A stretch of DNA of 64,000 nt from Isurus oxyrinchus (GCA_026770705.1 JANJGN010000014.1:90954001-91018000); one strand, 5' to 3'. Positions 39,694 through 60,442 are shown, counted from the stretch's first letter. A program made the numbers and translations. The notes: a model not told the origin generated them from the letters alone.

Positions 39694-40089
39694 GTCTACA
39701 GACCCTGGACCTAGCTAGGCACAAATCAGCGATGGCTTGCTGTGACTTTTCGGCAGTGTATGTGGGAGCCCCAGCCACCCCTTCTTCCAGAGGATACTGC
39801 TCTTCCCTCAATGCAGCCAGGTGCCTCAGGCACTCTCTTCTCTGTTGTCCTTGCTCTCTGTATGCACAAGGCAGACAGCTAGTTCACCAGGCTCCATAAT
39901 CCTAATGAAAGAGATAGACATGTGGGTTAGCATGGGTGTACTACCCCTTAACGCATCCTGGAGAGAGTGCTGGCCACCACTTGGAAAGTGCGCTGTATGG
40001 CTGCCTGAAACCCCACCTTCCTCCACCCCACTCCAACTAATCAGCTTTGGCTATTGGACTTCATGCTGTGTTCTCAGCTCCGGCATTCT

Positions 40090-40442
40090 CTTTTTTTTAT
40101 TTGCTCATCACTGTCTAGGTCAGCATTTATTGCCCATCCCTAATTCAATAATTGTTTAGAGGGTATTTAAGTTTAAGAGTCAACCACATTGTTGTGTGGT
40201 CTGGAGTCACATGTAGGCCAGACACCATAAGGGCAGCAGATTTCCTTCCCTAAAGGGCACTAGTGCCCTAGATGGGTTTTTATGGCAATTGGCAATGGTT
40301 TCACAGTTGTCATCAGACTTTTAATTCCAGATTTTTATGGAATTCGAATTTCACCATGTGGTGGGATTCGAACCCGGGTCCCCAAAGCATTACCCTGGGT
40401 CTCTGGGATAGACGTCAGTGACAATACCACCATGTCACCACC
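40090..40442 (-). mobile_element. tRNA-derived SINE
   Basis: Reverse complement of the SINE family, with GGGATTCGAACC B-box. Confidence 0.78.
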
Positions 40443-41439: not shown

Positions 41440-42516
41440 AAAGTGGGGTGGAAGAGTAAACAGGTCTAAGGTATAGATTCTCGAGCCATTAAAAGCAGCA
41501 GATTGACAAGGCCATAAAAATGCAAACAAAGCACTGAGGCTCATTTCTAAAAGAGTATAATTAAAAAGCAGAAAAGTTATGTTAAATTTTTATAATGAAC
41601 TTGGTTAGACGACACTTAGTCTACTGTGCACAGTTCTGGGGCAAAATTTTACGGCCCCGCCGCAGCGAGGGCGGGGCTAGAAAACGCAGTGAGCCTTTCA
41701 AAAGTCCATCGACTTCAGCAGGACCAGAAAATCCCACCAGCAGCAAGAATCATAAAATTTCGCCCCTGGTCTCCATATTCCAGAAAGGAGAAGGTGTAAG
41801 AAAAGATTTACATCATCAGAACTGAGAGGTTATAACTATCAAGAAAGGCTGAGCAGGCTCAGATTTGATTCTCTAGAAAAGAGAAAACTGAAAGGTGACA
41901 CAATAGAGATCTTTGAAATTATGAAGGTCGTTCATAGGGTAGAGAGAAGCAAAGTTAATGTTTCGATTCTGCACTGAAGAAGACTCATGAGGACTTGAAA
42001 TGTTGACTTTGTTTCTCTCTCCACAGATGCTGTCAGACCTGCTGAGTTTGTCCAGCATTTTCTGTTTTTATTTCATATTTCCAGGATCCGAAGTATTTTA
42101 CTTTTATCTAATTTACTTAGAGATTGGCTAGATTGTGGCACTTGCCATCACATGGACTGGTTGAGGCCAACAACAAACACACATTTTAAGGGGAAGTTAG
42201 CTAAGTACATTAGAGTGGAAGGAATAGAAGGTTATGACAATACAGTGGATGAAAGAAGGTGGGAGAAGCTTATGTAAAATATGAACATTGACATAGACTA
42301 GTTGGGACAAATGGCCAGTTTTTGTGTTGTAAATTCTATGTACATCCAAATTTACAGGTAACACTAAATTGTGTGGATTGGAGCAGGAAGTTATGAAGGT
42401 ACATAGACTAAGCGAATGGGCAAAACTTCACAAGATGGGTGTTGGGAAATATAAAGTCATCCACTTTGGTTCTGAGAAAGACAATTCAGAATATTTTTTT
42501 AATGGTGAAAGACAAG
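41440..42516 (+). mobile_element. CR1 fragments with a Penelope 3' end at about 41945-42108
   Basis: LVRRHLVYCAQFW and KVIHFG motifs; Penelope repeat with CTGAAGA..GAAA motif. Confidence 0.72.
41639..41765. mobile_element. 127-bp Harbinger-type MITE
   Basis: TIRs GGGCAAAATTTTA / TAAAATTTCGCCC with perfect CTG TSD; splits the CR1 motif CAGTTCTG|GTCTCC. Confidence 0.88.
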
Positions 42517-42996
42517 GGGCAGAATTTTCCCGTTGGTGTGCGAGGGTGGGCCCCCGCACATTTGTGCGTAAAATGACACGTGGTGATGTTGGTGAGTGTC
42601 CCGACAGCACCGCGCATGATTGCAATATTTCATTGGGCGGGCGTGCAATGATATCCGCTGCGCAGCTGCCATTAATTAACAGGCCATGTAAGTGCCCTTG
42701 ACTCACCAATCAACACCAATTTTTTGGCGCCCGTGCAATCTTCGGGTCGGCGCACAGGTGCAAGGGCAGGCGGGTAATACACATTTGTATGAACCTCATC
42801 CATAGACGGGATAAGAGGGCTCACTGGGGCCATGAGTGTTGATTTTTCAAAGTTTTTGAAATTTGCCTGTGATCTGCAACACTTCAAAATGCATGTCAGC
42901 TGCTTTCTCTGGACTCTTAACGTTCAGGTCAGCATTCTGCAGTGAGAAATCTTTTTTGGGCTTGCAGGTTTCAGGAAGCCTTCCCACAGCCTAGGA

Positions 42997-44211
42997 ATGG
43001 AAGCTCAACTGTCCACTGGAGACATCTCCTCTGAGGAGGGAGGGAGGGCTAGGAGGGGGAGGAGGCCAGGAATGCACATTTGGCCTCTAGGGGAGCCACC
43101 TTTTGGAGGACAGACGCAGGCACAAGGGGCGCAGGGCCAATAAGTAGACCAAGGCAGAAAGGGCCACAGAAGACGCCACTATCCTACTGCCAGAGTATAC
43201 AGGCAGCGAAGCAGCTACCTCAATATGTCTGAGGTGCAGTGCCGAAGGAGGCTCCGTCTCTCAAGGGATACAGTCAACTATACTGTCAGATGATTGGGCC
43301 TGAGATCTCCGCTAACTGTGCGGGTTGACACCCCATGCCAGTGACTCTAAAGGTCATAGCTGCCCTCAACTTCTATGCCTCTGGCTGCTTCTAGGGGCCG
43401 GCGGGTGATCTTTGCGGTGTCTCCCAATCAGCTGTCCACGCTTGTGTCAAGCAAGTTACAGGTGCTCTGCTTAGGCGTGCATTGACCTTAATCCACTTCC
43501 ATTGGAACCAGGCAAGCCAGACACAGCGAGCCAGAGGCTTCACAGTGATTACTGGCTTCCCCTGCATCGAGGGTGCAATAGACTGCACACATGGCCATCA
43601 AGGCACCAACAGATGAGCCTGGTGCCTTCATCAACAGGAAGGACAGATAGTGTGTGATCACAGGACGCTGATTCTACAAGTCTGTGCAAGGTACCCAGGC
43701 AGCTCCCATGACGCCTACATCCTCAGACACTCCCAGGTGCCGGGACTCTTCAGTGCTCCGGCCCGACTTGATGGACGGCTGCTGGGTGACAAGGACTGTC
43801 CCCTCTGAAGATGGCTCATGACGCTTCTCTGCCACTCAAGAACAGAAGCTGACCAGCGGTACAATAGGAGCCATGCCTCCACAAGGGCTGTGGTGGAGAA
43901 TCCCCATCAGTCTTTTCAAGATGTGCTTCCGATGCCTGGACCGCTCAGCGGGCACACTCCAGTACCGCCAGATTGTGTGTCGGTGGTAGTGGTTGCATGC
44001 TGCGCTTTCCACAATCTTGCGCTGGAAAGGGGGGGACACAGTGGACGATGAAGATGTCGACGCAGTGGCTGCGGCTGCACACGATGAGTCCAGCAGTGAG
44101 TCCAAGGATGAACATGCACAGGGAAGTGCTGAGGGGGTAGACGCTGACCTGGGCATTCTGCAGGGAGGCAGGGACACCTGGGAGGCTTTAATTCAATGAA
44201 CCTTCAGCTAG
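42997..44211 (+). pseudogene. Harbinger (HARBI1-family, DDE_Tnp_4) transposase pseudogene
   Basis: ALNFYASG, GVSQSAVH, GFPCIEGAIDCTH, YPGSSHDAYIL, LLGDK, RYNRSHASTRAVVE, ACCAFHNLA; contains stops and frameshifts. Confidence 0.93.
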
Positions 44212-44566
44212 CACACCACAGATGGACTTCCAGGACAAGCCTGGGCCGTAAGCTCCATGCTCGATAACTAAGTGCCAAATCTGCCAGGTTAGAACAGTAA
44301 CTAAGGGCCTTGTTAATAAAGCTGGATGTCCCACAAAGCATTCCTAACATTTTTGGAAAGCATACACATGCAGAAGAAAAGAGGCACCCTCAGCCATGAT
44401 CACATGTCTGAATTTAATATCACAAGCAAAGAAACTTAAGCCAAAAAAATGACAATGGTGTTCTAATTTAAAGCAAATCATAAAGGCCGCAACTCTGGCC
44501 AACACAAAAGCACCAGTGATAAACCTGTGGTGTGCCCAAGGTGCCTTATGTTTATGTTTCTGGGTG

Positions 44567-46710
44567 CTATGTCTTGGTACTGCCCCATCGCTGGGAGTGG
44601 CATCTGAGACAGCCTGCTGACTCTGCAGTCCTATTGGCCTCGATGACCTTGGCGGTCATTGTCTGGCCTGGAACCTGCGCTGGCCCTGCCTGGGAGGGAT
44701 CTGCCAGTTCCACAGCTGGCATCTCCCCAGTGGTCGCAGCCTCACCGGATGCTATGGTCACTGGGAGAGGGGCGGAGAAGCTGCCGCCTTCATCCGGAGC
44801 GCCCTGAGAGGTGCCCACAGAGACGACAGGCAGCTGCTGCGCTGACGTGAGGTCGCTTTGGATCTCCCTGTTCACCATGGATGGATGGGTACCGAGCTGG
44901 GAAACTTGGTGCCCACACCATCTGCCACACTGGCACTGACTAGCTGAGGTCAATGCCGATGTGAAGGCTTGCTGGTCAGAGAGCATCCCCAGAAAGCCCT
45001 GATGGGTCTCCTGGAGGAGCCTCTCCACGAGAATCATCACTCTCTCCATGGAGGATGCATGGCGCTCGGACATGTGGCTCATTGCTTTGGCGATCGTCTG
45101 CTTAGACTACTCCACCATGGAGACCAAGCCAAGCATAGCCTCATAGATCTCCCCCAGATGCTCCTGCATACCCAGCTGCATTTCTTGCCTCAGCTGCGTC
45201 GCGGATGACTCCAGAGGCACATCATCAGGCACTGACTGAGCATGTGCCTGGTCCCCTGTAATCCACTGACTGCTGGTGCCATGGGCACTCTCTGTCTCTG
45301 CCAGCTCCTCCAGCGACTGTGAAGTGCCCTCACTGCTGTGCTCCAGGACACTAGCCGATGCTCTAACTCCCACAGAGGCGCTAGTATCTGCGCTGGTGCC
45401 TGCTTGGCAGGGATGGTGGGATGCTGGTGAGACTTCAGGGCCCTCAGGTATGAGAGGGGACCTCTGCTGTTCCTCCTCTCAGCTCTGCTCTGCTGATGCT
45501 GAAAGGAAGAACAAGGACATTGGATCAGTTAACGTAGACAGAATGACAAAGTGCATCCATGTCCCCCGGATCATTATGCACCCATCCTTCCGTAAGCAAT
45601 GTTCAAGCCATATTGCAAAATTAAATCACTTAACATTCAGCACTGCTATGGCTGTTGGGAGAACAATGCTGACCTCACTGCTGGGCATATAAACCTGGCT
45701 GTAGCACCCCAGCCTCACCAACACCAGTGGACCTGGGCGCATGGCACCTCTCCAAATCCAAAGCCTCCTGCTCAAACTGGCTGAGAATGGCTAACTATGC
45801 CAGGCCATCGCCAGTCCTCACATGCTCAGCAGTATTATGAGCATTCTTCTCCTGAAAATGAAAGAAGAGCATTGATTTGTGCAAATTGTACATGAACTCT
45901 CTTCATGTATGGCCCACCCCAACCAGAATAGGACACATCAGGTCTCCAGTGTCTTCTCACCCCACTGCTGCCGAACACTCGCACAATGGTGCTAGGCCTG
46001 TTCCCCACCCCTCCACCGCCCCCTTGCCCACATGCTGCCTACATCACATAAGGCACCACATGGTATATCCTTCCATAGCAAGGAGGCGCAAGCACATGGA
46101 GCGCAGAGGGCAGCAGATGGTTCATTGCCACGCCACCTTACCGGTCCCCTCCCAGCATGTCATCACCCTGACTTGGACGTGTCCTGCAGTTGAAGCACTG
46201 CGCCTAGGTGCAGCTCCTCCAGGTTGCCCCCAAAACAGTAATGTGGGTCTCAGTGTAGCACATGCTGTGGGTGCAGAAGCCATCTCTTCACCACCCTCTC
46301 AGGGTGACCTTGGCATGGGCAATATCTGCTGGCCCACCCAGCAAAGGATACATGCCGTCAATGATTCCATGTAGTCATTACACTCAGACTTGGTTGGGGC
46401 GGGGGGAAGCAGGGGGCAAAGCCGACCTGCTGGGTTAAGCGACCAATGCCAACATTGTCCTCACTCTTCCAAAGCGCAACAAGCCATTGAAGCGCTTGTG
46501 ACACTGGATCCAGGTGCACCGCACCACGTCGTGGGAGCTCACAATCCCCACCACCTCCTCCCAGGCACGTTTCGTCATGTCGGGGGGGCACCTCCTGCTC
46601 CTGTCCTGGGGAACCAGCACCTCCCGCCGTGCTGCGACCTCCTCAAAGAGGGCTGCAAGGCAGTCATCAGAAAAATGAGGGGCACAGTACCCCCCTGCAC
46701 TACCCTCCAA
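44567..46710 (-). pseudogene. Harbinger Myb/SANT-like gene, spliced and decayed
   Basis: APHFSDDCLAALFEEVAARREVL..AWEEVVGIVSSHDVVRCTWIQCHKRFNGL; last exon at about 45500-44567. Confidence 0.85.
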
Positions 46711-47040
46711 CCTGGCCTACCTCAATGGCCTACCCAGCAGACTTGCGTCACCTCCATTGTCCCTCTGCAAAGCCCTTCACCCAGCCATTGCTAGGAACTT
46801 TTCCAGGGCTGTCAGGCCTTCCTTTATACAGGTCACTGGGTCGTCATTGGACCCATGGGCTGAGTGTACCCGCCGCTGCCCATTCACTCCCACTGTGCAC
46901 GGGAGTCATGAAGTACTCTGGGCTGGCCTTAATTGGCCCACCCACTTAAAATGGTGGCGTGGACACGATCGCGAGTGGCGGTCGGGTCCGTACCCACCCA
47001 CGCCCGCTCGGCCCCCTTTGGCATCCAGAAAATTCTGCTC

Positions 47041-48210
47041 TGGGACCTGTGGAACAGCAGAAAGACTCAGGTGACCATGCAATTGAGAAATTAAAGTAAT
47101 TTAAAAGCTAATGCAATGTTGGGCTTTATTTCAAGGGACTGGACACTCAAAGGTGAGGTAGCAATACTTCAGTTGTACAAAACCTAGTTAGACCCCATCT
47201 GGCGTACTGTGTTTCAGTTTTAGGAACCAAACCATAGGAAAGATGTATTGGCCTTGGGAGGGGGACAGTGTAGATGTTCCAGAATGATACTCAAATTTAA
47301 GTGGTTAAATTATGAGGACAGGTCAAATAAACTTGGCATATATTAGTTTAATAGTTTGAGGAGTGATCTAATTGAGGGGTTTAAAATGATAAGAAAGATT
47401 TGATTGGTGAGATACTGAGAAACCTTATGCTCTTATGGATAAATCCAGGCCAAGAGGACAGAATCATAGGGCAGGAGTTTTAGGTCGGCGAGCGGGCGTG
47501 ATCGGCCGGTCCAGGATTGGCCGAGGAACAGACCGCCAACTGCGATCGGCCCTGACTGCGAATTCACACTGGCTAGCTAATTAACAACTAACCATTGTAA
47601 TGCACACACTGAAAAGCTCAGCACTGCTAGGGTGGGGCTGGAAGAGGGCGAGCTCTGAAGTCAGCACGGGCATGGGCAAGCAATCACAGAAAGCTGAAGA
47701 CCTGAACAACCTGAAATAAAGGTCACAGAAACCAGAAAAAAGTGTCCAAGCTTCATAATCAGTCACCTGAAAATGTAGGTAATGAAAATGCTGTCAACAG
47801 TAATTTATTTTTATTTTAATTTATCACAGAAACCTCAATCTGTCCATGGATGAGATTTCCTGAAAAATGCAAAAGCCGCTTAGCCGATTTGCCCGCCAAC
47901 CAACTGTAACGTTGGACAGGCAACAAAAATCTCTGTTAATTGCGCCATTAATGAGCCTAATTGCCCTCTTAATTATCGGTGGGCACACTTCCGAGTTTAG
48001 CGTGTGCCCACTGACTGAAATATCGCATGATTGCACAATGATGTTGGGATGCTCGCCCGGGCTTTTTTATGCTCGAGTGGGTCAGGCACGTGCCTGCCGG
48101 CTCAGCGAAAAATTCTGTCCATAGAATTAGAGCTAGGCCATTTAGAAGTGAAATCAGGAAGTACTTTTCAAAACAAAGGAAACTGGAAATCTGGAACACT
48201 CTCCCCCAAA
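47041..48210 (+). mobile_element. CR1 ORF2 3' fragment containing a MITE at 47469-48120
   Basis: CR1 motif LYKTLVRPHLAYCV. MITE TIRs GGGCAGGAGTTTT / AAAAATTCTGTCC with ATA/ATA TSD. Confidence 0.8.
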
Positions 48211-49249
48211 AGAATGTGATTGTTGGGTCAACATAAGGGAGGGGAGAAATAACTGGACACTTTGTTCCAGAAGGCAGTCACACCACTTAGAACTGTTTTG
48301 GTCAGCAGTGAGGGACAGGAGGATGTGACCATGAATGAGGCAGGTAAAGGGACCAAGCAGATAGTAGTGGAGGAGCCTTCGACCGTGCAATTGTCAAACA
48401 GGTTTGAGGTGCTCACAACTTGTGTGGACAAAAATAAGGTCTGCAAGGTGGTTGACCAGGCTGGACATGGCCCCATGGTACAGGGAGCTGTTCAAGTGGA
48501 AGTAGCTAAGAGGAATGTAATGGTAGTAGGGGAAAGTATAATGAGCGGAATTGACAATGTTCTCCGCAGCAAAGAACTAATGTCCACCCAGAAGGAAAAA
48601 ACTATTTGGACCAGTTGAAGCCAGAACTTGTTTGAACTTGCACCAACTGTTGCTCAACTTGGCTCAAGGATTTTAATGGAAGCGACTAATGAAGTGGTAA
48701 TTCTACTGGAAATCCAGTAGGGGCTTCCAGTTTTCAAGTGGTGACCAGTATAGACACCACTATAGGCGCCAGTACTTTTAGCCGGCTTAAGCTAGTATTA
48801 CAGCCGCTGTCAATTTTACTGCTGAACATATGCCTCTCCCTCATTCCTCTTTATCCCCCCCATCATCCCCCAACTCCCACGACACCATATGCTCCGCTCC
48901 CAACAACTTCCCCCATCACTTCCCAACTCCCTACTCCTCCCCACCTTCCATCCCCGCTACTCCTCCCTGCCCAATCCCCTACTTCCCACCCCAACCCTCC
49001 TAGCCCTCCTGCTACTTTCCCTACCCCACACTACTCCCCCACCCTCTCTACCCCCTCCCACCCCCTCTACACCCCTGTTCCCCTACCCCCTAGCTACCCT
49101 GCCCACCCCCGCCCATCGCACTAACGCCCCATTCCCCCCAAGTCCCCGCTACCCCAACTCTCCCCACCACTTGCACCCCACCCCCAACTTCCTACTCCCC
49201 CACTGGGCCCACCCCCACCCGGAGATCTTCGCTAAGGGCTGGCTGGAAG

Positions 49250-49262
49250 CCGGAAGTGACGT
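49250..49262 (+). promoter_or_regulatory. ETS-CRE composite promoter motif
   Basis: CCGGAAGTGACGT in a CpG-rich patch, followed by a GTGAGT donor at 49330. Confidence 0.55.
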
Positions 49263-49717
49263 TTGTGGCCGGTTGGCGCAGCTCCAGATTTGAAATGCAC
49301 GCGGGAACAGCGAGGACTGTTGGAGCAGGGTGAGTACTGGGGAGGTTCGGTGTCAGGGGAGAGAGTTTGGTGGTGATGGCGGCAGTGGTGGAGAGAAATG
49401 GTTGAGAGTTCAGGCGGGGGTGGTGGGCAGAAGAGAGAGGCACCAGAATTTGGCACCATCGGCAGGGCTGAAGGCCTGGAGACTGGAGAGAGGGAGAGGG
49501 CGAAGATTTTGGAGGCTGGAGGGAGGGGGAGTTGATACTGGAGAGAGAGAGAGGGGTCAGAGAGCCCACCAACAAGTTGGAGGGGGGGGATTGGTTAGCT
49601 GAAGAGAGATATAGAGTGGGGGTAGTAGAGGCATGCTTTTCGCAACTCAGGAGAAAAGAGCTTGTTTTTGGTGCTGATTTCTTAAATCAATACAAATCAT
49701 ATCTCTAGGAACTAAGA

Positions 49718-51680
49718 ATGTCTGGCAGCAAAGTTCGCTTGTGTCCGATTCCTGGACAATAAGCAAGTCTGCAGGATTGTGTCAATTAAAGAGGACATCA
49801 AAAAGTTTGATCCCAAGACCCACCATGACTCAAAGGTGTACAAGGTAAGGTGGGTCCAGGCAAGCATCGGAAGCTCAATTTAACTGCAATTTGTGGAAGG
49901 AGAACCGGTTGCAGGACAATTTTTTTTTATAAGGCACAGATCCTTTTGCTTAGAGGTAAATTTCAATGAAAAAGCTGAAAGTTTGTGCTCATGGCCTTTG
50001 CAAATTAAGTGTATCTTTGAAACATGTTGAAGTTTTCTTTCTTCTTCTGCAAAGTCCTGCGAAGGCCTCAAGGAGCTGAAGGAATCAACGCACATGCATA
50101 TCATAAAGGTTTGGGAAACTATTGTAGAGTGACACCAGTGCCGACAACGTAGCCCTCGAAACCCTTCAAGCGAAGAGGGCTTTGGAAGACGCTACTGTGA
50201 CCAGGATACACGTGAAGTTCTCAACTCATTGTGTATCATCGTCTTTGCTAATATTGTATTCTCACAGACCTGCATGAACAATTATGTGCCTAAAAGCAAA
50301 TAGTGCACGAAACTTGTATGCCTTCTCATGTCAAAAATGTCAACAACATTGTTAACATATAATTCCTTTTTCCTGATAGAAGGATAAGGTTGCCTGAACA
50401 TACGCTGGCCAACACAAGAAGGTGAGAAGCATGAAGTCCCAACATCTAGCGATCACGAGTAATAAAGCTAGGACTTCAAAGGCAGCAATGCAGCTAAAGG
50501 ATTGTGCAGAACCTGCCCAGAACTGGGAAAAGCTACTGACCATTCAGAGGCTGGAGGCAGCGAAGGCAGCCCTTGGCCAGCAGAAGCTGAAGGTAGAGAA
50601 GGTGACCCTGCAACAAAATTTGGAGGAGTTTTCTGGGTTCAATCAAGGCCTCTGGGAAAGGTTGGAGTTCGAGCTATAAAAGCTCAACTATAGGCTCCAG
50701 GACCAATTTTTCAGCACCTGTATGCAGAGTAACATGCATCTAGGTAACTGCAACCCTTATGCAACAGTTACCTTAGTGCTGAGTTGTCATTATAGGCTTA
50801 ACTATTACTCTTGCTTTCCATTGCAGCATAAGGACCACAACAATCATATGTGGGGACACTGCAGCTTATGACCATGCCTTTCAGAGCAATAGGCCTGCAC
50901 AGATTGAAGATGCACCTGCATTTATTCACACAGTTATGGCAAGTACACATGTGGAGGTGCTTTTCACTCCAATAGATGGAAAGGTATGATTTTCTGAATG
51001 TTCCAGATAAAAACTGTGCAGGTTCACAAAGTATCCTTAAAAGGATGATTCTAATCATCCTTAAAAGGCTGGTAAGATGAGCTGAGGGCACAGATAGGCA
51101 CGTGGAAATATGATATCATAGCTATGACTGAGACTTGGCTAAAAGGGCAGGATTGGCAGCTCAATGTTCCTCATTATAGGGTATTCAGATGGGATGGAGC
51201 GGACAGAAGTGGGGGGGTTGCAATATTGATCAAGAAATCAATCATAGCAGTGAGGAGGGATGATATCCTGGAGGATCATCAAATGAGACCAAATGGGTAA
51301 AGTAAAAAACACAAAAGGGCAAACACGATGTTGGGTGTGTACTATAGGCCCCCAAATGGTTAGGGAGAGATAGAGGATCAAATATGTAATCAAATTTCAG
51401 AGAATTGTAAGAAAATGGGATTAGTGTAGTCAGATCTTTGTTGACTGGCACAGACACGACGGGCTGAATGGCTTCCTTGGGTGCTGTAAACATCTATGAG
51501 TCTATAAAACTGATGGATATCACTGTGGTGATATATGTATCATCTTCATTCATGCAGTCTGTATATGCATTGGTAATTTAGTCTGAATTACAGATCTTGC
51601 ATGTAGAACACTAATATGTTCCTTTCTTTCCCCCTACAGGTTCAATTGCAGGGAGGTCTGTAGCTCAGTGAGCGGCAGTT
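49718..51680 (+). pseudogene. Spliced BEND5-like (BEN-domain) gene remnant inside the transposon
   Basis: Exon 49709-49955: KFACVRFLDNK..IVSIKEDIKKFDPKTHHDSKVYKVRW..FYKAQILLLR. Coiled-coil ORF at 50422-50679. Exon from 51640: VQLQGGL*LSERQ (start of a BEN domain, then truncated). Confidence 0.72.
51085..51506 (+). mobile_element. Internally deleted CR1 (endonuclease start plus 3' tail)
   Basis: WKYDIIAMTETWL..GGVAILIK followed by the CR1 3'UTR and CTATGA-type tail. Confidence 0.75.
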
Positions 51681-53871
51681 ATTTTTCCATTTGTTTTTTA
51701 ATTGTTTTTCGCTATTTGTTTAACTTTAACTATTTCAATGAATAAATGCTTATGTTTTCCGTCTTCCTTCTCCATCTGCAGCATATTTCACTCATCATTT
51801 GAAGGAGGGGTTGAGCGAGGATCAGGTCTCAAAGGAGCAAAGCAAGCTGATCAGTTATATAATGGGGAGAAGAATGGATCTGAACTGTGAACAAATTTAG
51901 CCTGAAATCAATCAGCATTTTGATATGATGCATGAGTTATTTGTGTTTGTTCACTTCTTTTCCAGGAATAAAGTTGTTGACCCTTTACAGAAACCTTCAT
52001 TCTGAGATTTTTTTTGCCTGTGATCAATGAGGAATTTTAATTTTGTATGCTTGGCGTTTTTCACAATAAAATTTGCACAGTTTTTACTCATTCCTCTTTT
52101 TATTCTGAATGTTTTGTCAGACCTGCAAATGCAGAATTCCACTTATTAATCTTTCCATTCCATTAATTTCCATTAAAAAAAATACACATTGGAAGGGGGA
52201 GCTAATCACATCAGTTGATGCTCACCAGCAATAAATGTGATAAATAAATACATATAAGTATAAGTGCAATATAAAACGCAATGGATAAACTAGAAAAATA
52301 ACCAGTTCAGACCAATATTACTGGCACCACCTTCTGGCTTACTGGTACCATTACCAGTGTTAACTGGCTATTTCTACTGGAGCACCAGTTCTGAACTGTT
52401 CTTATTTCTCTGTTCAGAACTGGTACCTTTATTACTGGAACTTCCTTCTGCTTAGATAGCTGTGCTGCCTGCCCAGTGTCAGGGTTCGTGACATTTGCTC
52501 AAGGCTGGAGAGGAACATGCAGGAGGGATTTGATAAGGTGCCACATATCAAAGGTCATTGTGGAAAATAAAAGCTCATGGTGTAGAGGCTAACATATTAG
52601 CTAGAAGATTGGCTAGCTGACAGAAAACAGTATGTTTAAATGGGTCTTTTTTATGATTGGCAGGGTCTGATGAGTGGAATCCCACAGGGGTCTGTGCTGT
52701 GCTCAACTTTTAATGATTTATATTAATGACTTAGATGAGGAGTGAAGGAATGATAGCCAAATATGCAGATGACACAAAGATAAGTAGGAAAGTATGTTGT
52801 GAAGAGGACATAAGGGGTTGCAGACAGATGTAGATAGGTTGAGTGAGTGGGCAAAAATCTAGCAGATGGAGTATAATGTAAGAAAATGTGAAGTTGTCAC
52901 TCTGGCAGGAAGTACAAAAAAGCAGAGTATTGCTTAAACAGAGAATGACTGCAGAGGGATCAAGGTGCAAGTGTCACAAAAAGTATGCAGGTATGGAAAG
53001 TAATTAAGAAGGCTAATGGATGCTATCCTTTATTATGAGAGGAATTGAACATAAAAGTAAGGGTGTTATACTTCAGTTACACAGGGCATTGGTGAGACCA
53101 CGTGTCAAATACTATGTGCCGTTTTGGTCTCCTTATTTAAGGTAGGATGTAAATGTGTTGGGAGTGATTCAGAGGAAATTTACTAGATTGACACCTGGAA
53201 TGAGCCAGTTGTCTTATGAGGAAAAGATGGACAGACTGGGCTTATTTCCACTGGAGTTTGGAAGGGTGAGAGGTGAATTAATTGAAGTATATAAGATCCT
53301 GAATGGTATTGACAACATGGACCTGGAAAGGATGCTTTCTCTTGTGGGTGAGTTTAGAATTAGGGGGCACTGTTTTAAAATTAGAGGTTGCCTTTTTAGG
53401 ATAGAGATGAGAAGATTTTTATCTCGGAGAGTTGTGCAACTTTGGAACTCTCTGACTCAGAAGGCGGTGGAGGCAGAGTCATTGAATATTTTTAAGGTGA
53501 AGGTAGATAGATTCTTGTTAGGCGAGGGAATCAAAGGTTTGTCGGGGGGTAGATGAGAATGTGGAATTCAAAGCACAAACAGATCAGCCATGGTCTTACT
53601 GAATGACGGAGTAGGCTCGAGTGGCCAAATGACCTACTTCTGCTACTATTTCATATGTTTGTATGCTTGTAACTGGAAATTTTCAAGTCTGAGATTAAAA
53701 GCTTTTTGTTAGCTATATGTAATAAGGGCAATGGATCGAAGGCAAACAAATGAAGTTTAGATACAGATTGGTTATGATCTAACTAAATAATGGAAGAGGT
53801 CTGAAGGACTGAATGGCCTACTTCTGTTCTGATACTCCTATGAATGCTTAAAGCATTTCAAGCGTACTTAC

Positions 53872-54039
53872 AGCTTGGCTTGCTCTGTAGGAATGGGTAG
53901 CTGCAGTTTGGCAATGAAAATTGCTCCTATGGGCAAAGGCATAACTCCTCCAGCCAGGTATGGTGTTGGACCACTGTGAAGTAAAATCTGGACCAATTGT
54001 AGATTTGTTTCCAGAGAAAGACCGAATCTGTGGTGTTTG
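53872..54039 (-). pseudogene. Open 168-bp symmetric exon-like segment of the unidentified gene
   Basis: CTTCACAG acceptor and GTAAGT donor; KHHRFGLSLETNLQLVQILLHSGPTPYLAGGVMPLPIGAIFIAKLQLPIPTEQAK with no stop. Confidence 0.55.
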
Positions 54040-55283
54040 CTGTGAAGATAAATCACAGTGAAATAAAAACATTAGCATCTACTTCAATGGTAGCTGAGTG
54101 AGCCTAAGACAAACCATGACATTATTATATGAAGTAATCTATATAATGGTAGTAAATCTAATCAGATCTGACTTGCTATATGTGCAATCCCAACTTATTT
54201 TCAATTAGATACACTTGTTGCGACTCATTGGGAATAGTGCACTGCAACATCAAGCCCCACTGCTCCCCGAGGTGCGACAAATGTGAAAAGTTTGATCAAA
54301 CGACTTACTTGTTAAATCTGGTTAACAGAATAGGAGCACCAAGCTTGTAAACTTAATAAGTAAATAACTGTTATTTGAACAAATTGTCTTTAACCAGTGG
54401 CAAAAGAAAGAAATATGAACTGCTAATTTCTAACTCTATAACCTAAACTCTACCCCTTCTTAAATCCCTATACACACACATACAAGTCACATAAGACACA
54501 CAAAAACATGGATTTTAAGGGTGGGATAAAACAGTTCAATAGCACCAATTCTGGAGCATAGGATTCGATGGGTTGATTTTGATCGATGTTTTCCAAATTC
54601 CTTTCAGTTCTTTGTTGATGACACGAGGTGGTCTTCCCAGCGCTTTCAGTCTTTAGTTCACTCGTTGAGTACTTGCTTTTCAATGTCTCTGATGGTGATT
54701 TTCCCCTTTTCCTCTTGACATGGGTTTTTTGGAGAGAGCATAGCTTATAGAGATATGAGGGGAAAAAACAGCTAGCTATTATTGTAGAATTATTGGAATC
54801 TTACACACACACACACAGGAGAAAGAGATTTTATGTCTTTTCTCTTTTCAGGCTTGGAGCTTTTTCCAGCTGCACAGCTCTCACACAAACCCTGGTCACC
54901 TGGTTGGGAGCCAATTAAAATGTTGTTGCTAGGCCGTTCCCCATTAGAGCGGACTCCTGCTCGGCACCATCCTGTCTTTCATGGCACACACTGTTCCAGG
55001 ACAGAAACAAGGTATTTATCCCTCACACTGTTCCAGTACACATGCCTTTCAAACTGCAGCCATTGTAATTTTAATCCACAGTCCAACAGAAATAAAAAGA
55101 TATATTCTTTACAACACTCCAACAGAAATAAAAAGATATGTTCTTTACATGCCTCCACCCTTAAAAGAGATGAAACACCATTTCAAAAATGCATTTCATC
55201 ACAAGGTATGTGACACATGGAAAACAAAACAGGAGACTTGCTTCCATCCATCCTTCCTGCCCCTTATACAATCTTCAGTATTT

Positions 55284-56603
55284 GTTCTGATGATGCCACT
55301 TTCCAAAACTGTTCCTCTGACATGTCTTCCTTCTTCCTTAAGTAAGGTTTTCCACCCACGGTGGTTGACAGGGCCATCTCCCACGTATCCGCCCTCGCAC
55401 CTTCCTCTCCCTCCCAGAAACATGATAGGGTCCCCCTTGTCCTCACTTATCACCCCACCAGCTTCCGCATTCAAAAGATCATCCTCCGCCATTTCCGCCA
55501 ACTCCAGCATGACACCACCACCAACCACATCGTCCCTTCACGCCCCCCATCAGCATTCCGAAGGGACCGTTCCCTCCAGGACACCCTGGTCCACTCCTCC
55601 ATCACCCCTACACCTCAATCCCCTCCCACAGCACCTTCCCATGCAATCGCAGAAGGTGTAACACCTGCCTCTTTACTTCCCCCCTCCTCACTGTCCAAGG
55701 GCCCAAACACTCCTTTCAAGTGAAGTAGCACTTCACTTGCACTTCCTTCAATTTAGTCTATTGCATTTGCTGCTCCCAATGCGGTCTCCTCTACATTGGA
55801 GAGACCAAATGTAGACTGGGTGACCGCTTTGCGGAACACTTTTGGTCTGTCCGCAAGCGTGACCCAGACCTCCCTGTCGCTTGCCATTTCAACACACCAC
55901 CCTGCTCTCATGCCAACATGTCCGTTCTTGGCCTGCTGCAATGTTCCAGTGAAGCTCAATGCAAACTGGAGGAACAGCACCTCATCTTCCGATTAGGCAC
56001 TTTACAGCCTTCTGGACTTAACATTGAGTTTAACAACTTCAGATCATGAACTCTCTCCTCTATCCCCACCCCCTTTCCGATCCCCCTTTTTCCAATAATT
56101 TATAATTTTTTTCATACATTTAAAAAAAATTTTTTTTTTTCTTTTCTCACCGATTTCTATTATTTTTAAGTTCATTTCTATCCATTGTTTTATCTCCACT
56201 CTTTAGCCTATTTCAATCCCTTCCCCCCACCCCACCCCCACTAGGGCTATCAGTCACTTGCTCATCCCGCTTTCTACCCTTAATGTCACCATTAGCACAT
56301 TCCTTAGCTAATATCACCACCATCAACACCCTTTTGTCTTTTTACCTTTGACATCTTTGGCAATCTCTTCTTTGCCTCCACTTATCACTGGCCCTCTATC
56401 CAGCTTTACCTGTCCCACCCCACTCAACCAGCTTATATTTTACCTTATTTCTATCTTTCCTTAGTTCTGATGAACAGTCATTTGGACTCGAAACATTGAC
56501 TGCGTTCCTCTCTGCTGATGCTCTCAGGCCTGCTGAGTTTTTCCAGCTAATTTTGTTTTTGTTTCAGGTTTTTTGTTTCCAGCATCCGCAGTATTTTGCT
56601 TTT
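55284..56603 (+). mobile_element. Penelope-like element nested in the Gypsy 3' region
   Basis: GIY-YIG remnant LYIGETK; 13-bp TSD ATCTTCAG(T/C)ATTT at 55271-55283 and 56604-56616. Confidence 0.88.
56463..56501 (+). ncRNA. Minimal hammerhead ribozyme motif with canonical CTGATGA core
   Basis: AGTT-CTGATGA-ACAGTC ATTTG GACTC-GAAA-CATT-GACT. CATT is probably a CpG-decayed CGTT. Confidence 0.68.
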
Positions 56604-56699
56604 ATCTTCAGCATTTCTTACCCCTTTAACTTATTTCAGTATTTTACACTCAGGACAATGTAACTACGATCATATTATCTTTGCCAGCATGTGAACAAT

Positions 56700-59600
56700 T
56701 TTTACATTGAATGATTGAAAGAATAGACTCCACCTAAACAGTTTCGCATTTCAAGTTTTAAACTTTTCAATGAATGCCAGCAGATTATGGTTAATGTAAA
56801 TTAATGTTTCTTTGTTATCGTGTCAGAAATAAACTTCAAAGAGTTGAAGAAATAACAATGCTAGAGTTTCTTTATCTACTGTACAGTACTTCCTCTGATG
56901 TTGATTTAGTCTCTTGGAAAAGTACCCCACCAGCTTCTCTAACTCTAATTTATCATTGTGTTACAGGACTGCACCCACCCCCAAGTCACTAGCATCAATT
57001 GCATTTTAAAAGGTTTGGTAAAGTCAGGAGTGGCCAACACTGGTTCATTTATTAAGATTGCCTTCAGATTTTCAAAGGCTGCTTGGCATTTTGCTGACCA
57101 CACCACTTTTGCCTGTTTTCTTAACAAATTGGTGAGAGGTACAGCTATTGTGCTGAAGTTAGACACAAACTTCTGATAAAACCCACGCATTCCCGAAAAT
57201 CTGATGATTTCTCGTGCTACCGTGAGTCCTTCTAGAAACATGGACATGTAATCCAACATGGAGGATTTGTCTTTCTGCTTTAGAAACTTTTCCTTAATCA
57301 CTTTTAATGAACCTCTTATTTCATGGCCATAGATCAATTCAAATAGATTAAATCCTGTAGAATAATTTGGAGAATCTCTGGTAGCAAATAGTAAGAAATC
57401 TAATCCTTTGTCCCAATCCTTTGGGTATTCATGGCAATAGATCTTAATCATGGTTTTGAGAGTCTGGTGGTCTCTCTCTAAAGCTCCCCGTGTCTGTGGA
57501 TGATAGGTTGTAGACTTCAGTTGTTTGATACCCAAACTGCTGATTATGTCCTGGAAAATTTTAGACATGAAGTTAGAATCTTGGTCAGATTATATTTCAA
57601 TTGGCAGGCCATAACGAGTGAAAAACTGAGTTAACTTTTCCAGTACCGCCTTAACTGTAATTTTCCTTATAGGAATAGCTTCTGGAAATCGAGTTGTCAT
57701 ATCCATGATTGTAAGGATATACTGATGTCCTGCTTTCGTTTTGGGTAATGGCCCTTCACAATCTAGTAATACCCAAATGAATGGTTCTTCAAAAACTGGT
57801 ATGGGTATGAATGGTGCTGGTTTGATTACATGTTGAGGTTTACCTACTACCTGACATGTATGACATGTTTTACAAAATTGCACTATATCCTTATGAAGTC
57901 TTGGCCAAATAAAATGCCTGTTTATTGATACTTGATTTTTCCGTATTCCTTCATATCCTACAATAGGAATTTCATGTGATACTTGCAATATCTCCTTACG
58001 ATATTTGGGCGGTACCACTATCCGATGAACAGCCATTCGTTCCTCAGCCGCAGGTCTGTGAGGGTGTCTCCACTTCAGCATCAGAACTCCGTTTTTAATG
58101 TAATAGCACTCCGGAACTCTTTCTGCTTCATCTTCAATGTGAGCTGAATGTGTTAACTTGTTTAACTCTGGATCTGCTTTCTGAGCCTCAATTAATGAAG
58201 ACATGCCAAACACTTCCTTTGGATTATCCTCATCCTTAAAGAGAATTTCAGCTACTCTAACATTTGCTTGCAGTATTAGTTTGACCTCTGGTGGTGGACT
58301 TTGTTTAGTCATTGCTCTGGTCACCCCAAACGATGGAAAAATACCAGGAACTTGTTCTTGTAACTGCTGTGTCTCTTTAGTCTCTCTCAGACTTTCCGTA
58401 ATTATGGGTGAAACTATAACCTCCACTCCTGCCAAATCGTTCCCCAGGAGTAAATCAACTCCATCCACAGGTAATTTCTTAACAACTCCTACAAACACCG
58501 ATCCAGACAACACAACACACTCCAATAACACTTTGTACAATGAAACTGGGATATACTCTCCACTTATCCCGTTTACCAATGCTTTAGCTTTCATTGAGCT
58601 CTCTGGAGGGAAAACTAGGTCCTTCTCCAGCAAAAGAATTGAATTCCTGTGTCCCTTAGTTATGGGTTTAGTTGCATCATTTGATGTAAAAGGGGATATC
58701 TTTCCTTTAGACAAAAACCCTCTTTATCTCTCATCTACCTTATTCACTTCACCTGCATTCACAGCAGTGGTTACCTCCAGTCCCTTATTTGTAATTAAAG
58801 CTACAATTTGATCTGTGGCATTTTCTTTTTGAGTTCCCTTTTCAGACTTACTCTTATGAACTCCAATAAGTCCCATGGGCTTCCCTCGCAACTTCCAGCA
58901 TTCCGAACAAATGTGTCCCACTTTATTACAAGGGAAGCACTTAGACCTTCGAGTTTCACCTCTACCCTCAATACCTTCCTTCCTGATCTGGGGATGAGAT
59001 CTCAAGGTATTCCCAGCTGTCCATTCTTTACCCTGGCTATTTGCCCTCCTTTCACTCTCCCATTTTCTATCCTTTTTAAATTTATGGGGTGATGGATAAA
59101 AGGTTTAGTTTTATGGATCAGGTCATAATTGTCAGCCATTACTGTTGCCTATCTCGTTGTTGAACCCTTTGGTCTTCAACATGGGTTCTTATTACAGAAG
59201 GTAGGAAGTTTTTAAATTCTTCCAGGAGATTGGTCTCTCTGAGAACTTCATAAGTAGTTTCAACTCCTAATTCTCGTATCCACCTGTCAAAACTACTTTG
59301 CTTAACCCTTTCAAATTCAATGTAAGTTTGCCCAGGCTGTTTCCTTAAATTTCAAAACTTTAGTCTGTATGCTTCAGGGACCATCTCATATGTGCTCAAA
59401 ATGGCCTTTTTCACCACATCATAATCCCCAGAAACCTCCTTTGACAGTGAAGCATAAATTTCCTGTACTCTGTCAATTTGCTCTGTATAGGCAATGTCCA
59501 ATTTTATCTTTGGCCAGTTCATCTGTTTAGCTATCTTCTCAAACGAAATAAAGAATGCTTCAACATCCCTTTCCTCAAACTTGGGAAGAGCTTGTACAAA

Positions 59601-60104
59601 TTTAAACATCTCCCCACTGGGTTCTGATCTGGAAATAAATCCTGCCTCATCTACTGGTATCTCGTTTTTAACTGCCACTTTTCTAAGCTGGAATTCTCTG
59701 TCTCTCTTTTTCACTCTTTCCTCCTTTTCTAACTTTGCCATTTCTAATTCCCTTTCTTGTTTTCTTTCTCTCTCTTGCCTTTCTGCCGAAAATGATCTTC
59801 CTTTTTCTTTTTCTGCTGCCTCCAGCTCAAGTTTTTTAATTTCCTTTGCTTGTTCAAGTTCCAGCTTCTTCAATTCTAACTGAAGTCTCACTATCTCCAG
59901 CTGTGACTCACTAGTGTCAGCCATCACTTCCAACTTTACATGCTGTGCTATACTTTCAATTATGTCTGCCTTTCTAGCTTTGGCAGGCAATCCTACTCTT
60001 AATTTACCTGACAATTTGATTAACCTGGCTTTTGGAATCCCTTGTAAAATCATCAGGGTCATCTCTTCCACTTGCAGGAAAGCTTTAGCAGTTTCCAGTG
60101 CCAT
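56700..60104 (-). pseudogene. gag-pol remnant in PR-IN-(RT)-RH order
   Basis: LPKFEERDVEAFFISFEKIA..WP; CFPCNKVGHICSEC; CKTCHTCQ; DCEGPLPKTKAGHQYILTIMD; YHPQT; fused to GFYQKFVSNFSTIAVPLTNLL..PVLATPDFTKPF. Confidence 0.9.
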
Positions 60105-60296: not shown

Positions 60297-60442
60297 AAAT
60301 AAAAATAAAAACAAAGAAAACTGCGGATGCTGGAAATCCAAAACAAAAACAGAATTACCTGGAAAAACTCAACAGGTCTGGCAGCATCGGCGGAGAAGAA
60401 AAGAGTTGACGTTTCGAGTCCTCATGACCCTTCGATAGAACT
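60297..60442 (-). mobile_element. Penelope 3' repeat inserted in the 5' LTR
   Basis: Absent from the other LTR; TGAAAA duplicated on both sides; contains the hammerhead motif at 60404-60442. Confidence 0.88.

What the first reader, a model, noticed from the sequence alone, without database searches (positions are those of the whole stretch)
48587..52452. EnSpm/CACTA-like transposon carrying a spliced BEND5-like gene
Seen: a 3.9-kb insertion splits a CR1 ORF1 and has CCCAGAAGGAA-type inverted ends and ACTGG subterminal repeat clusters. Inside is a plus-strand multi-exon unit: promoter motif, non-coding exon, then FACVRFLDN..IKKFDPK..KVYKVRW..KAQILLL, a coiled coil, and VQLQGGL*LSERQ. Known (from memory): vertebrate BEND5 reads YAFVRFLEDN..VRDFSP..KVYAVY..KAQILAL and has VHLGSGIW at the start of its BEN domain. 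Inference: a shark transposon family carries a BEND5-type gene as an accessory ORF. It could be a relative of the element from which BEND5 was domesticated, or a captured host gene. No transposase is recognisable, so the superfamily call rests on the termini.
Basis: partly seen in the sequence, partly recalled or inferred. Interest (0 to 1): 0.85.

Follow-up and report, generated by a model that had tools for sequence, protein, structure and literature searches.

The report
Dead shark transposon carrying BEN gene
A 3.9-kb jumping-gene relic sits inside an older repeat and carries the broken remains of a BEND5-like DNA-binding-protein gene; it belongs to a small multi-copy family, but it is not the CACTA type first proposed.

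Summary
At 48589-52450 a discrete 3.86-kb insert interrupts a highly repeated LINE. It ends in a perfect 9-bp inverted repeat (CAGAAGGAA) and has inverted clusters of CCAGT/ACTGG motifs at both ends. Its interior is collinear with shark proteins that NCBI names "BEND5-like". The 55-aa N-terminal piece matches a Stegostoma protein (69% identity, E 7e-12, searched against 1.8 billion proteins).

This copy is a pseudogene:
- its ATG is out of register;
- it has in-block stops and frame changes;
- it carries a nested 511-bp LINE fragment;
- the BEN core is gone, so Pfam BEN scores 0 of 9 pieces.

Contigs of public DNA runs show roughly 10-30 copy-equivalents in this species and in a close relative. 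At least two paralogous contigs share the BEN-core loss, which suggests that a defective derivative was amplified in trans.

The EnSpm/CACTA call fails: there is no CACTA terminus, no 3-bp duplication and no transposase. The superfamily stays open, with hAT-like my leading guess. The BEND5 label rests on database names, a catfish BEND5 match (E 2e-25) and Atlas neighbours. Tetrapod BEND5 itself was never retrieved.

Three unchecked first-stage notes report a similar hidden BEN gene elsewhere in this genome. Interest is moderate.

The parts
48262..48588 (+). Left flank: host LINE, ORF1-like reading frame ending ...GIDNVLRSKELMST
   Evidence: ORF list and translation. Summed contig depth is 5e3-5e4. 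An empty-site contig joins 48556 to 52459 (table 5c).
48589..48597 (+). Left terminal inverted repeat, CAGAAGGAA
   Evidence: one of only 2 matches in the window, in inverted orientation to the other.
48598..48830 (+). Left subterminal region: 6 CCAGT/ACTGG motifs (5 of them CCAGT) and the palindrome CTACTGG-AAAT-CCAGTAG at 48703-48720
   Evidence: z -3.73. Summed depth is about 320 against about 33 for single-copy contigs in run X1.
48838..49216 (+). C-rich low-complexity tract
   Evidence: Repeat family D1 has 11 degenerate copies. The tract is near single-copy in contigs (depth 53-75 in X1). Its complementarity to the G-rich tract is no better than shuffles (39.7 bits against a shuffle maximum of 45.4).
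49217..49329 (+). CpG-richer core with CCGGAAGTGACG, ending at a GTGAGT donor-like site at 49330: putative promoter and non-coding exon (inferred only)
   Evidence: Sequence read. CpG o/e is 0.57-0.66 against 0.32 for the window. Depth is 108 in X1, about 3 times single copy. There is no transcript evidence.
49330..49708 (+). G-rich tract, putative intron 1, ending in an AG at 49707-49708
   Evidence: families D2, D4. Depth rises from 193 to 599 across 49396-49769.
49709..49955 (+). First coding exon: N-terminal domain block 49728-49877 plus KAQILLL at 49925-49960 in another frame. The ATG at 49718 is out of register and there is a stop at 49881.
   Evidence: E 7e-12, 69% to P0001; 70% over 50 aa, E 9e-17 in the element-only search; KAQILLL block 67% over 12 aa.
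50055..50202 (+). Second coding block (SCEGLKELKE... to ...QAKRALEDATVT), with a stop and frame change near 50130
   Evidence: QGKRALEATSVT against QAKRALEDATVT; 8 of 12 identical.
50455..50736 (+). Coiled-coil block, with a stop at 50677
   Evidence: E 5e-4 to P0007; 0.026 to P0004.
50885..50989 (+). Block ending ...LFTPIDGK, followed by a GT donor
   Evidence: ASTHVEVLFTPIDGKV against P0007, 69% over 16 aa, E 0.002.
51020..51530 (+). Nested LINE endonuclease fragment, absent from other family copies
   Evidence: Pfam Exo_endo_phos E 8.4e-8 on 51076-51297. Depth is 1e4-1.6e5, and the joint 51019->51531 is seen in 2 contigs of X1 and 1 of X10.
51640..51678 (+). Start of the BEN exon, VQLQGGL*LSERQ. 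The TAG at 51661 is private to this copy.
   Evidence: At 51661, 17 contigs of X1 (depth 615 of 654) read G (table 3).
51679..51780 (+). T-rich intron-like remnant standing where the BEN core (about residues 236-297 of P0003) should be: the deletion junction
   Evidence: tblastn finds no BEN core anywhere in the window. The paralogous contig X1 record 5 spans 51639-52045 with only 25 gap letters.
51781..51900 (+). Last coding block, AYFTHHLKEGLSEDQ...NCEQI, plus its stop
   Evidence: 45% over 40 aa, E 3e-5 to P0005 and P0006.
51901..52299 (+). 3' untranslated-like region with AATAAA at 51967 and 52065
   Evidence: family D6. A contig of the RNA-guessed run X21 covers 51957-52237 at 96% (record 16).
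52300..52441 (+). Right subterminal region: 9 motifs (6 of them ACTGG), a 14-bp-stem palindrome at 52385-52423, and an internal copy of the end at 52311-52336
   Evidence: D8, I1, I5; z -6.19. Depth is about 685 in X1.
52442..52450 (+). Right terminal inverted repeat, TTCCTTCTG
52451..53553 (+). Right flank: the host LINE continues (LCCLPSVRVRDICSRLER), then jumps to reverse-transcriptase-like sequence
   Evidence: Depth is 1e5-8e5. There was no Pfam hit on 5 short pieces.

Best explanation
This is an old, dead copy of a non-autonomous cut-and-paste (terminal-inverted-repeat) DNA transposon, inserted into the ORF1-like part of a LINE. Without the later 511-bp LINE fragment it is about 3.35 kb.

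Its ends are a perfect 9-bp inverted repeat plus mirrored arrays of (A/T)ACTGG motifs and a palindrome within about 250 bp of each tip. I infer that these are the binding sites of a transposase supplied in trans; this is inferred, not shown.

The interior is an intron-containing gene of the BEN-solo type: a small N-terminal domain, a coiled coil and a BEN DNA-binding domain. It is homologous to shark genes that NCBI names BEND5-like. An intact version would presumably make a dimeric sequence-specific DNA-binding protein (inferred).

In this copy the gene is destroyed. The start codon is out of register, there are in-block stops and frame changes, and the BEN core is lost. Paralogous contigs share the BEN-core loss and differ from this copy by about 10-15%. 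I therefore conclude that a defective derivative was amplified, without needing its own gene, to about 10-30 copies before or around the split of the two sampled species.

The superfamily is undetermined. hAT-like is my leading guess and EnSpm/CACTA is unlikely. Whether the gene was captured from the host or belongs to the element lineage is open; I lean slightly towards an ancient whole-gene capture.
For: ENDS. The inverted-repeat pattern occurs only at the two junctions (2 matches, 0.05 expected). Motif clusters occur only at the two ends and are mirrored. Both ends have palindromes.

DISCRETE INSERTION. The flanks continue one reading frame. An empty-site contig joins 48556 to 52459 (table 5c).

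GENE HOMOLOGY.
- 2 of the 3 whole-library HMMER hits are BEN-type shark proteins (E 7e-12 and 3e-7).
- P0003 passes the Pfam BEN threshold (28.9 bits against a cut-off of 23.2).
- Seven collinear blocks map onto the shark proteins P0003-P0007 (P0004 is an isoform of P0001).

MULTI-COPY STATUS. In run X1 the summed contig depth is 320 (left end), 420-1150 (gene body) and 685 (right end), against 33-36 for contigs that match this locus. Between 9 and 19 distinct variant contigs cover single sites. The picture is similar in X10, from a second species.

INTRONS. Paralogous contigs contain intron sequence, so these are DNA-level copies and not retrocopies (records 3-7).

SHARED BEN-CORE LOSS. X1 record 5 spans the junction, and a contig carrying G at 51661 reaches 152 letters from its end.
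Against: - No target-site duplication is recognisable next to the ends. The flanking 8-mers TGTCCACC and CTTAGATA share 2 of 8 positions.
- Six bases (TCCACC) at the left junction are unexplained.
- The stretch 48835-49395 (C-rich tract and 'promoter') is near single-copy in contigs (depth 53-108). Most copies may therefore have another 5' interior, and the left end is only about half as abundant as the right.
- Contig depth is not a true copy number; the tool itself says so.
- No listed contig links the left end to the gene in a paralogue.
- No spliced joint was listed in the two runs guessed to be RNA.
- Three first-stage notes report copies elsewhere that do have a BEN domain. The deletion derivative is therefore not the whole family.
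Confidence: 0.6

Rival explanations
1. One reading: an EnSpm/CACTA-superfamily element carrying the BEN gene as an accessory ORF.
For: There are subterminal repeat clusters at both ends. Some CACTA elements carry a second gene (recalled).
Against: The termini are CAGAAGGAA/TTCCTTCTG, with no CACTA/TAGTG. The 3 bases on each side differ (ACC, CTT). No transposase is present. Subterminal repeats are not specific to CACTA. Base-counting against the one empty-site contig does not single out a 3-base duplication; it fits 0, 6 or 9 best (by eye).
Confidence: 0.05
2. The element is a non-autonomous member of the hAT superfamily. This refines the best explanation rather than competing with it.
For: The terminus begins CAGAA, matching 4 of the 5 positions of the recalled hAT consensus YARNG. 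It has a short inverted repeat plus short subterminal motifs and palindromes. The size class fits.
Against: No 8-bp duplication is present (2 of 8 positions match). No hAT transposase or dimerisation domain was found. The consensus comparison rests on recall.
Confidence: 0.3
3. The BEN gene is the element lineage's own DNA-binding partner protein, comparable to the Myb-like protein of PIF/Harbinger. BEN-only elements would then be one half of a two-component system.
For: The element holds a whole gene with promoter-like region, introns and poly(A) signals inside the ends, not a fragment. Gene and ends have similar multiplicity. First-stage notes in this genome describe Harbinger elements that keep only their Myb gene (unchecked).
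Against: Copies that lost the BEN core were still amplified. No transposase partner is known. In four sharks the same gene type is annotated under single gene names with open frames (P0003, P0005, P0006), which looks like host genes. Four literature searches found no BEN-encoding DNA transposon.
Confidence: 0.15
4. It is not a transposon. It would be a DNA-level duplicate of a BEND5-like gene that landed in a LINE by repair or segmental duplication, with the inverted ends being chance.
For: No clean target duplication is seen. The 5' interior is near single-copy. First-stage notes mention three copies, and amplification within a tRNA cassette, elsewhere in the genome (unchecked).
Against: A perfect 9-bp inverted repeat lies exactly at both junctions, with mirrored motif arrays and palindromes found nowhere else in 64 kb. 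Both ends are themselves multi-copy.
Confidence: 0.1

Closest known systems
Shark genes annotated 'BEN domain-containing protein 5-like' or uncharacterized: Stegostoma tigrinum XP_048398036 (P0001/P0004), Mustelus asterias LOC144489645 (P0003), Cetorhinus maximus LOC144672782 (P0005), Carcharodon carcharias (P0006, P0007)
   Same: They have the same block order: N-terminal (F/Y)A(F/Y/C)VRFLD(D/N) domain, coiled coil...TPIDGKVQLQGG..., and C-terminal tail. The N-terminal block is 66-70% identical and the tail 43-45%.
   Different: Those are open reading frames, and P0003, P0005 and P0006 carry a Pfam BEN domain. The window copy has stops and frame changes and lacks the BEN core.
Vertebrate BEN-solo factors BEND5 and BEND6
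   Same: Each has a single C-terminal BEN domain preceded by a coiled coil. P0003 matches catfish 'BEND5 isoform X1' at 31% identity, E 2e-25. Its nearest Atlas clusters are BEND5-like (0.96), BEND5 (0.94) and BEND6 (0.94). [quoted passage not shown]
   Different: The teleost proteins retrieved lack the N-terminal domain. BEND5 and BEND6 are host genes not known to lie in transposons.
Non-autonomous terminal-inverted-repeat DNA transposons (hAT-like as the nearest guess)
   Same: It has a short perfect inverted repeat, mirrored subterminal motif arrays and palindromes, makes a discrete insertion, forms a multi-copy family, and has no transposase of its own.
   Different: It carries a complete multi-exon host-like gene. 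The target duplication is not recognisable. The superfamily is unassigned.
EnSpm/CACTA
   Same: Subterminal repeat clusters only.
   Different: There is no CACTA terminus, no 3-bp duplication and no CACTA transposase.
PIF/Harbinger two-gene elements (transposase plus Myb-like DNA-binding protein) and gene-carrying elements such as Pack-MULEs (recalled)
   Same: The idea is shared: a DNA-binding-protein gene or a host gene travelling between transposon ends. Harbingers are abundant in this genome according to first-stage notes.
   Different: TAA and TTA triplets do lie 8 bases and 1 base outside the inverted repeat, but using them gives asymmetric ends. There is no Myb gene and no DDE_Tnp_4 domain. 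Pack-MULEs usually carry gene fragments, not whole genes.

Membership tests
EnSpm/CACTA | Termini 5'-CACTA/CACTG ... TAGTG-3' | tested here: not met
   The termini are CAGAAGGAA ... TTCCTTCTG. The definition is recalled.
EnSpm/CACTA | 3-bp target-site duplication | tested here: not met
   The flanking triplets are ACC and CTT. Base-counting against one empty-site contig fits 0, 6 or 9 extra bases best (by eye).
EnSpm/CACTA | CACTA-type DDE transposase in autonomous copies | not testable with these tools
   None is present in this copy. Longer copies could not be fetched (closed).
hAT | 8-bp target-site duplication | tested here: not met
   TGTCCACC and CTTAGATA match at 2 of 8 positions. Decay of an old copy cannot be excluded.
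hAT | Terminus fitting YARNG | tested here: inconclusive
   CAGAA fits 4 of 5 positions. The consensus is recalled.
hAT | hAT transposase in autonomous copies | not testable with these tools
   None is present here. There was no access to other copies.
Terminal-inverted-repeat DNA transposon (class II, non-autonomous) | Inverted repeats exactly at the insertion boundaries | tested here: met
   A perfect 9-bp repeat lies at both junctions. The pattern is found only there (2 matches, 0.05 expected).
Terminal-inverted-repeat DNA transposon (class II, non-autonomous) | Multiple copies sharing ends and interior | tested here: inconclusive
   Ends and interior are each multi-copy in two species. One paralogous contig links 51909-52345. 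No contig links the left end to the gene, and full copies were not seen.
Terminal-inverted-repeat DNA transposon (class II, non-autonomous) | Target-site duplication | tested here: inconclusive
   No duplication is seen adjacent to the ends. Only a single diverged empty-site contig was available.
BEN-domain proteins (Pfam PF10523), BEN-solo type | A BEN domain above the Pfam threshold | tested here: not met
   In this copy 0 of 9 stop-free pieces hit BEN, and there is no BEN core by tblastn. The relative P0003 passes (28.9 bits against 23.2). P0001 does not (16.6).
BEN-domain proteins (Pfam PF10523), BEN-solo type | Homology of the remaining blocks to BEN-solo proteins | tested here: met
   N-terminal block E 7e-12 against the whole library. 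Tail E 3e-5, coiled coil E 5e-4.
BEND5 orthology group | Groups with BEND5 rather than BEND6 or other BEN proteins in a tree; shared intron positions | not tested
   No tetrapod or shark BEND5 or BEND6 sequence was retrieved. Only database names, the catfish match and Atlas neighbours are available.

The most novel reading that the evidence does not exclude
The BEN-solo gene is native to this transposon lineage. Its protein would recognise the ACTGG-rich ends and work with a separately encoded transposase. Vertebrate BEND5/BEND6-type factors would then descend from such an element, a BEN counterpart of the HARBI1/NAIF1 story.
Probability: 0.12. Interest if true: 0.8.

Novelty: new variant of a known kind. 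Interest (0 to 1): 0.45.

Why it matters
BEN domains are sequence-specific DNA-binding modules whose origin in animals is unclear, and some relatives occur in viruses. A cut-and-paste element family that carries a whole BEN-solo gene between its ends would be one of two things. It could be a rare animal example of whole-gene capture and dispersal by a DNA transposon. Or it could be a living relative of the source of BEND5/6-type regulators. Either way it makes the question testable in shark assemblies. The single copy studied here is dead and has no function of its own.

Tried and rejected
OTHER COPIES IN THE WINDOW. blastn of both flanks, both ends and the interior against the window found no other copy. 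tblastn of the flank peptides found no second copy of the host LINE. The empty site could therefore not be defined within the window.

PFAM. 0 of 9 stop-free pieces hit BEN. 0 of 5 right-flank pieces hit any family, so the 'CR1' and 'ORF1' labels were not confirmed.

PROTEIN SEARCHES.
- The three word-index searches returned 5 of 2246, 19 of 8000 and 4 of 112 candidates. All were sharks or otophysan teleosts. No tetrapod BEND5 or BEND6 appeared, so no BEND5/BEND6 tree was built.
- PDB sequence searches with P0003 and with the profile A1 gave only coiled-coil noise.
- The Atlas search with the 55-aa piece was uninformative.

STRUCTURE. The AlphaFold model of P0003 had mean pLDDT 53.5. I judged it too poor for a fold search, so none was run.

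OTHER SCANS. The metagenome scan for relatives found 459 pattern matches, none confirmed. There are no tRNA genes at 40000-60000.

PALINDROME IDEA. I tested whether the C-rich and G-rich tracts form a true palindrome and rejected it: 39.7 bits against a shuffle mean of 30.6 and maximum of 45.4.

HELITRON AND HARBINGER. I read the junctions by eye for both and set them aside. There is no TC...CTRR terminus. TAA and TTA triplets would give asymmetric ends.

LITERATURE.
- Searches listed no paper on a BEN- or BEND5-carrying DNA transposon, judged from titles and abstract starts only.
- I read passages of PMC11601247, of 10.1101/2023.12.06.570431 and of PMC4281564.
- For PMC13465315 I saw only a reference-list entry.
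- Pan et al. 2023 (PMC10348805) is not held. I saw only its title, and it may bear on BEN domains in mobile elements.
- No supplements were opened. Repbase-type libraries are not searchable here.

Full report
WHAT IS THERE

The stretch 48589-52450 is a discrete insert. The pattern CAGAAGGAA followed within 5-30 bases by CCAGT occurs exactly twice in the 64-kb window. One match is at 48589 on the plus strand and the other ends at 52450 on the minus strand. The expected number is 0.05, and none of 100 shuffles gave two matches.

The 5-mers CCAGT/ACTGG occur 171 times in the window, or 0.53 per 200 bp. Only two 200-bp bins hold four or more: 48601-48800 (six) and 52201-52400 (seven). The orientation is mirrored: 5 of 6 are CCAGT at the left end and 6 of 9 are ACTGG at the right end.

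Each end also holds a palindrome made of two such motifs. The one at 48703-48720 has z -3.73. The one at 52385-52423 has z -6.19, and 0 of 200 shuffles fold as well. The repeat finder shows imperfect longer inverted arms (I1, I5) and an internal copy of the right end (D8).

THE HOST

The left flank reads ...VMVVGESIMSGIDNVLRSKELMST. The right flank reads LCCLPSVRVRDICSRLER and then jumps into reverse-transcriptase-like sequence. Both flanks are extremely repeated in public DNA runs, with summed contig depth 5e3-8e5.

One contig of run X1 joins 48556 to 52459 with 33 letters between (table 5c). This is a copy of the host repeat without the insert.

No Pfam family scored on the left-flank piece, and 0 of 5 right-flank pieces scored. 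No second copy of this LINE lies in the window.

TARGET DUPLICATION

None is recognisable. The eight bases outside the two ends, TGTCCACC and CTTAGATA, agree at 2 of 8 positions, and the triplets ACC and CTT differ.

I counted bases by eye against the single, diverged empty-site contig. This copy has 42 bases where the other has 35, which suggests about six to nine extra bases. If instead the six unexplained bases TCCACC at the left junction belong to the insert, there are none extra. This cannot be settled from one contig.

THE GENE

Stop-free pieces were searched one at a time. I did not build or search a joined, spliced model.

The 55-aa piece 49716-49880 was scored against 1.84 billion representative proteins and gave three hits at E 0.001 or better:
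- P0001: 470 aa, 69% identity, E 7.4e-12.
- P0003: 342 aa, 66% identity, E 3e-7.
- P0002: a WD40-repeat false positive, with six repeated stretches.

P0001 is 'BEN domain-containing protein 5-like isoform X4' of Stegostoma tigrinum. P0003 is an uncharacterized protein of Mustelus asterias. P0003 passes the Pfam BEN threshold (28.9 bits against 23.2). P0001 does not (16.6).

Further relatives are Cetorhinus P0005, Carcharodon P0006 and P0007, and otophysan teleost proteins named BEND5 or BEND5-like. P0003 matches catfish 'BEND5 isoform X1' at 31% identity, E 2e-25, over the coiled coil and BEN domain. The teleost proteins lack the N-terminal domain. The Atlas puts P0003 next to clusters named BEND5-like (0.96), BEND5 (0.94) and BEND6 (0.94).

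Tetrapod BEND5 itself was never retrieved.

COLLINEARITY AND DAMAGE

tblastn of the stored shark proteins places seven blocks in the right order on the plus strand:

| Block | Coordinates | Match |
|---|---|---|
| N-terminal domain | 49728-49877 | 70% over 50 aa; E 9e-17 in the element-only search |
| KAQILLL | 49925-49960 | in a different frame |
| QAKRALEDATVT | 50167-50202 | 8 of 12 identical |
| Coiled coil | 50455-50736 | E 5e-4 to P0007 |
| ...LFTPIDGKV | 50885-50986 | 69% over 16 aa to P0007 |
| VQLQGGL*LSERQ | 51640-51678 | 50% over 22 aa (51613-51678); E 0.026 to P0004 |
| C-terminal tail | 51781-51897 | 45% over 40 aa; E 3e-5 |

The damage is as follows:
- The ATG at 49718 is one base out of register with the conserved frame.
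- There are stops at 49881, near 50130, at 50677 and at 51661.
- The frame changes inside the first coding exon.
- About residues 236-297 of P0003, the core of the BEN domain, have no counterpart anywhere in the window. A 102-base T-rich intron-like remnant (51679-51780) stands in their place.

Accordingly 0 of 9 pieces hit Pfam BEN.

The stretch 51020-51530 is a later LINE endonuclease fragment. Pfam Exo_endo_phos scores E 8.4e-8, and other family copies skip exactly 51019->51531.

A FAMILY, NOT A SINGLETON

I laid contigs of four public runs on 47900-53500 at 80% likeness. X1 is the probable source species. X10 is a related species whose runs hold about 40% of the sampled 31-mers. X21 and X24 are runs of that second species guessed to be RNA.

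Contigs that match this locus almost perfectly have depth 33-36 in X1. Summed depths in X1 are:

| Region | Summed depth |
|---|---|
| Left end (48648-48834) | about 320 |
| 48835-49395 | only 53-108 |
| Gene body | 420-1150 |
| Right end (52201-52387) | about 685 |

X10 shows the same profile: 50, then 5-36, then 165-420, then 196. The tool warns that summed depth is not a copy number.

Distinct variant contigs give an independent lower bound. There are 9 at 48623, 17 at 51661, 19 at 51744 and 15 at 52202 in X1, and 7, 12, 16 and 17 in X10.

Paralogous contigs differ from this copy by about 10-15% (records 3-7). They contain intron sequence, so the copies are DNA-level duplicates and not retrocopies. 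Record 7 runs from 51909 into the right motif cluster at 52345. No listed contig links the left end to the gene in a paralogue.

At 51661, 17 contigs read G, so the TAG stop is private to this copy. Record 5 (51639-52045, 25 gap letters) shows that the BEN-core loss is shared by paralogues. So does a contig that carries G at 51661 and reaches 152 letters from its end.

X10 contigs match the near-single-copy part at 96-99% (records 8, 9, 12). This is consistent with the same insertion being present in the second species, but no junction contig was listed.

EXPRESSION

The two runs guessed to be RNA give thin cover of some exon-bearing bins and of the 3' region (X21 records 15 and 16). One contig includes intron sequence. 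No splice joint was among the listed rows. Nothing can be concluded about expression.

THE 5' INTERIOR

The stretch 48838-49216 is a C-rich low-complexity tract and 49330-49620 is G-rich. Between them lies a CpG-richer core containing CCGGAAGTGACG and a GTGAGT donor-like site. CpG o/e is 0.57-0.66 there, against 0.32 for the window.

The complementarity of the two tracts is compositional only: 39.7 bits against a shuffle maximum of 45.4. This looks like a promoter with a GC-skew switch, but that is inference. Its near single-copy status is unexplained.

INTERPRETATION

The best reading is a dead copy of a non-autonomous terminal-inverted-repeat DNA transposon that carries a whole BEN-solo-type gene. 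It belongs to a deletion-derivative subfamily that was mobilised in trans.

EnSpm/CACTA fails its two sequence tests: no CACTA terminus and no 3-bp duplication. It also has no transposase.

hAT is the best guess from the CAG start and the end architecture, but it fails the 8-bp duplication test, so I do not file the element there.

Capture of a host gene versus a gene native to the element cannot be decided without other copies and the loci of the annotated shark genes.

EARLIER NOTES OF THIS SCAN

Three unchecked first-stage notes describe a 'hidden multi-exon BEN-domain gene' with a BEND5-like N-terminus on other pieces of this genome. One mentions three copies and one a tRNA cassette. This agrees with the multi-copy result and suggests that copies with a BEN domain exist. 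Other notes describe Harbinger elements that keep only their Myb gene, which is a possible parallel. I tested none of these.

LITERATURE

Four searches listed no paper describing a BEN- or BEND5-carrying DNA transposon. I judged them by titles and abstract starts, plus passages of three papers. Pan et al. 2023 on the phylogeny of BEN domains is not held and might be relevant. Transposon reference libraries are not searchable here, so 'not in print' is a limited statement.

VERDICT

The element is a new variant of a known kind and is dead at this locus. Interest is moderate and depends on what a genome-wide collection of copies shows.

Noticed in passing
window 51020-51530: A LINE endonuclease fragment (Pfam Exo_endo_phos, E 8.4e-8) is nested in an intron of the BEN gene. 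Other family copies skip exactly this stretch, so it arrived after the element inserted.
   Followed up: yes
window 52520-52570: The host LINE passes from ORF1-like sequence (LCCLPSVRVRDICSRLERNMQ) straight into reverse-transcriptase-like sequence (EGFDKVPH...). This looks like a large internal deletion of the host LINE copy.
   Followed up: no
window 48835-49395: The C-rich tract and the CpG-richer 'promoter' core are near single-copy in public contigs (depth 53-108, against 420-1150 for the gene body). Either most family copies have a different 5' interior or low-complexity sequence is lost from the contigs. This is unexplained.
   Followed up: partly
window 5615-5832, 8377-8481, 9868-9912, 24546-24725, 31961-32134, 42011-42124, 60344-60388: The odd C-terminus of the Stegostoma model P0001/P0004 (DAAGPAMLFQQFLFL...) matches a short repeat scattered through this window on both strands. 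That gene model's last exon therefore looks like an exonised repeat, not BEN-protein sequence.
   Followed up: partly
window 48611-48660: Just inside the left end, CAGTTGAAG is followed by three (G/C)AACTTG motifs. The first nine letters recall the start of Tc1-type ends. This is probably chance.
   Followed up: no
window 48583-48588: Six bases (TCCACC) lie between the last LINE-like bases and the left inverted repeat. They have no counterpart at the right junction or in the empty-site contig. They may be filler DNA or a decayed target duplication.
   Followed up: partly
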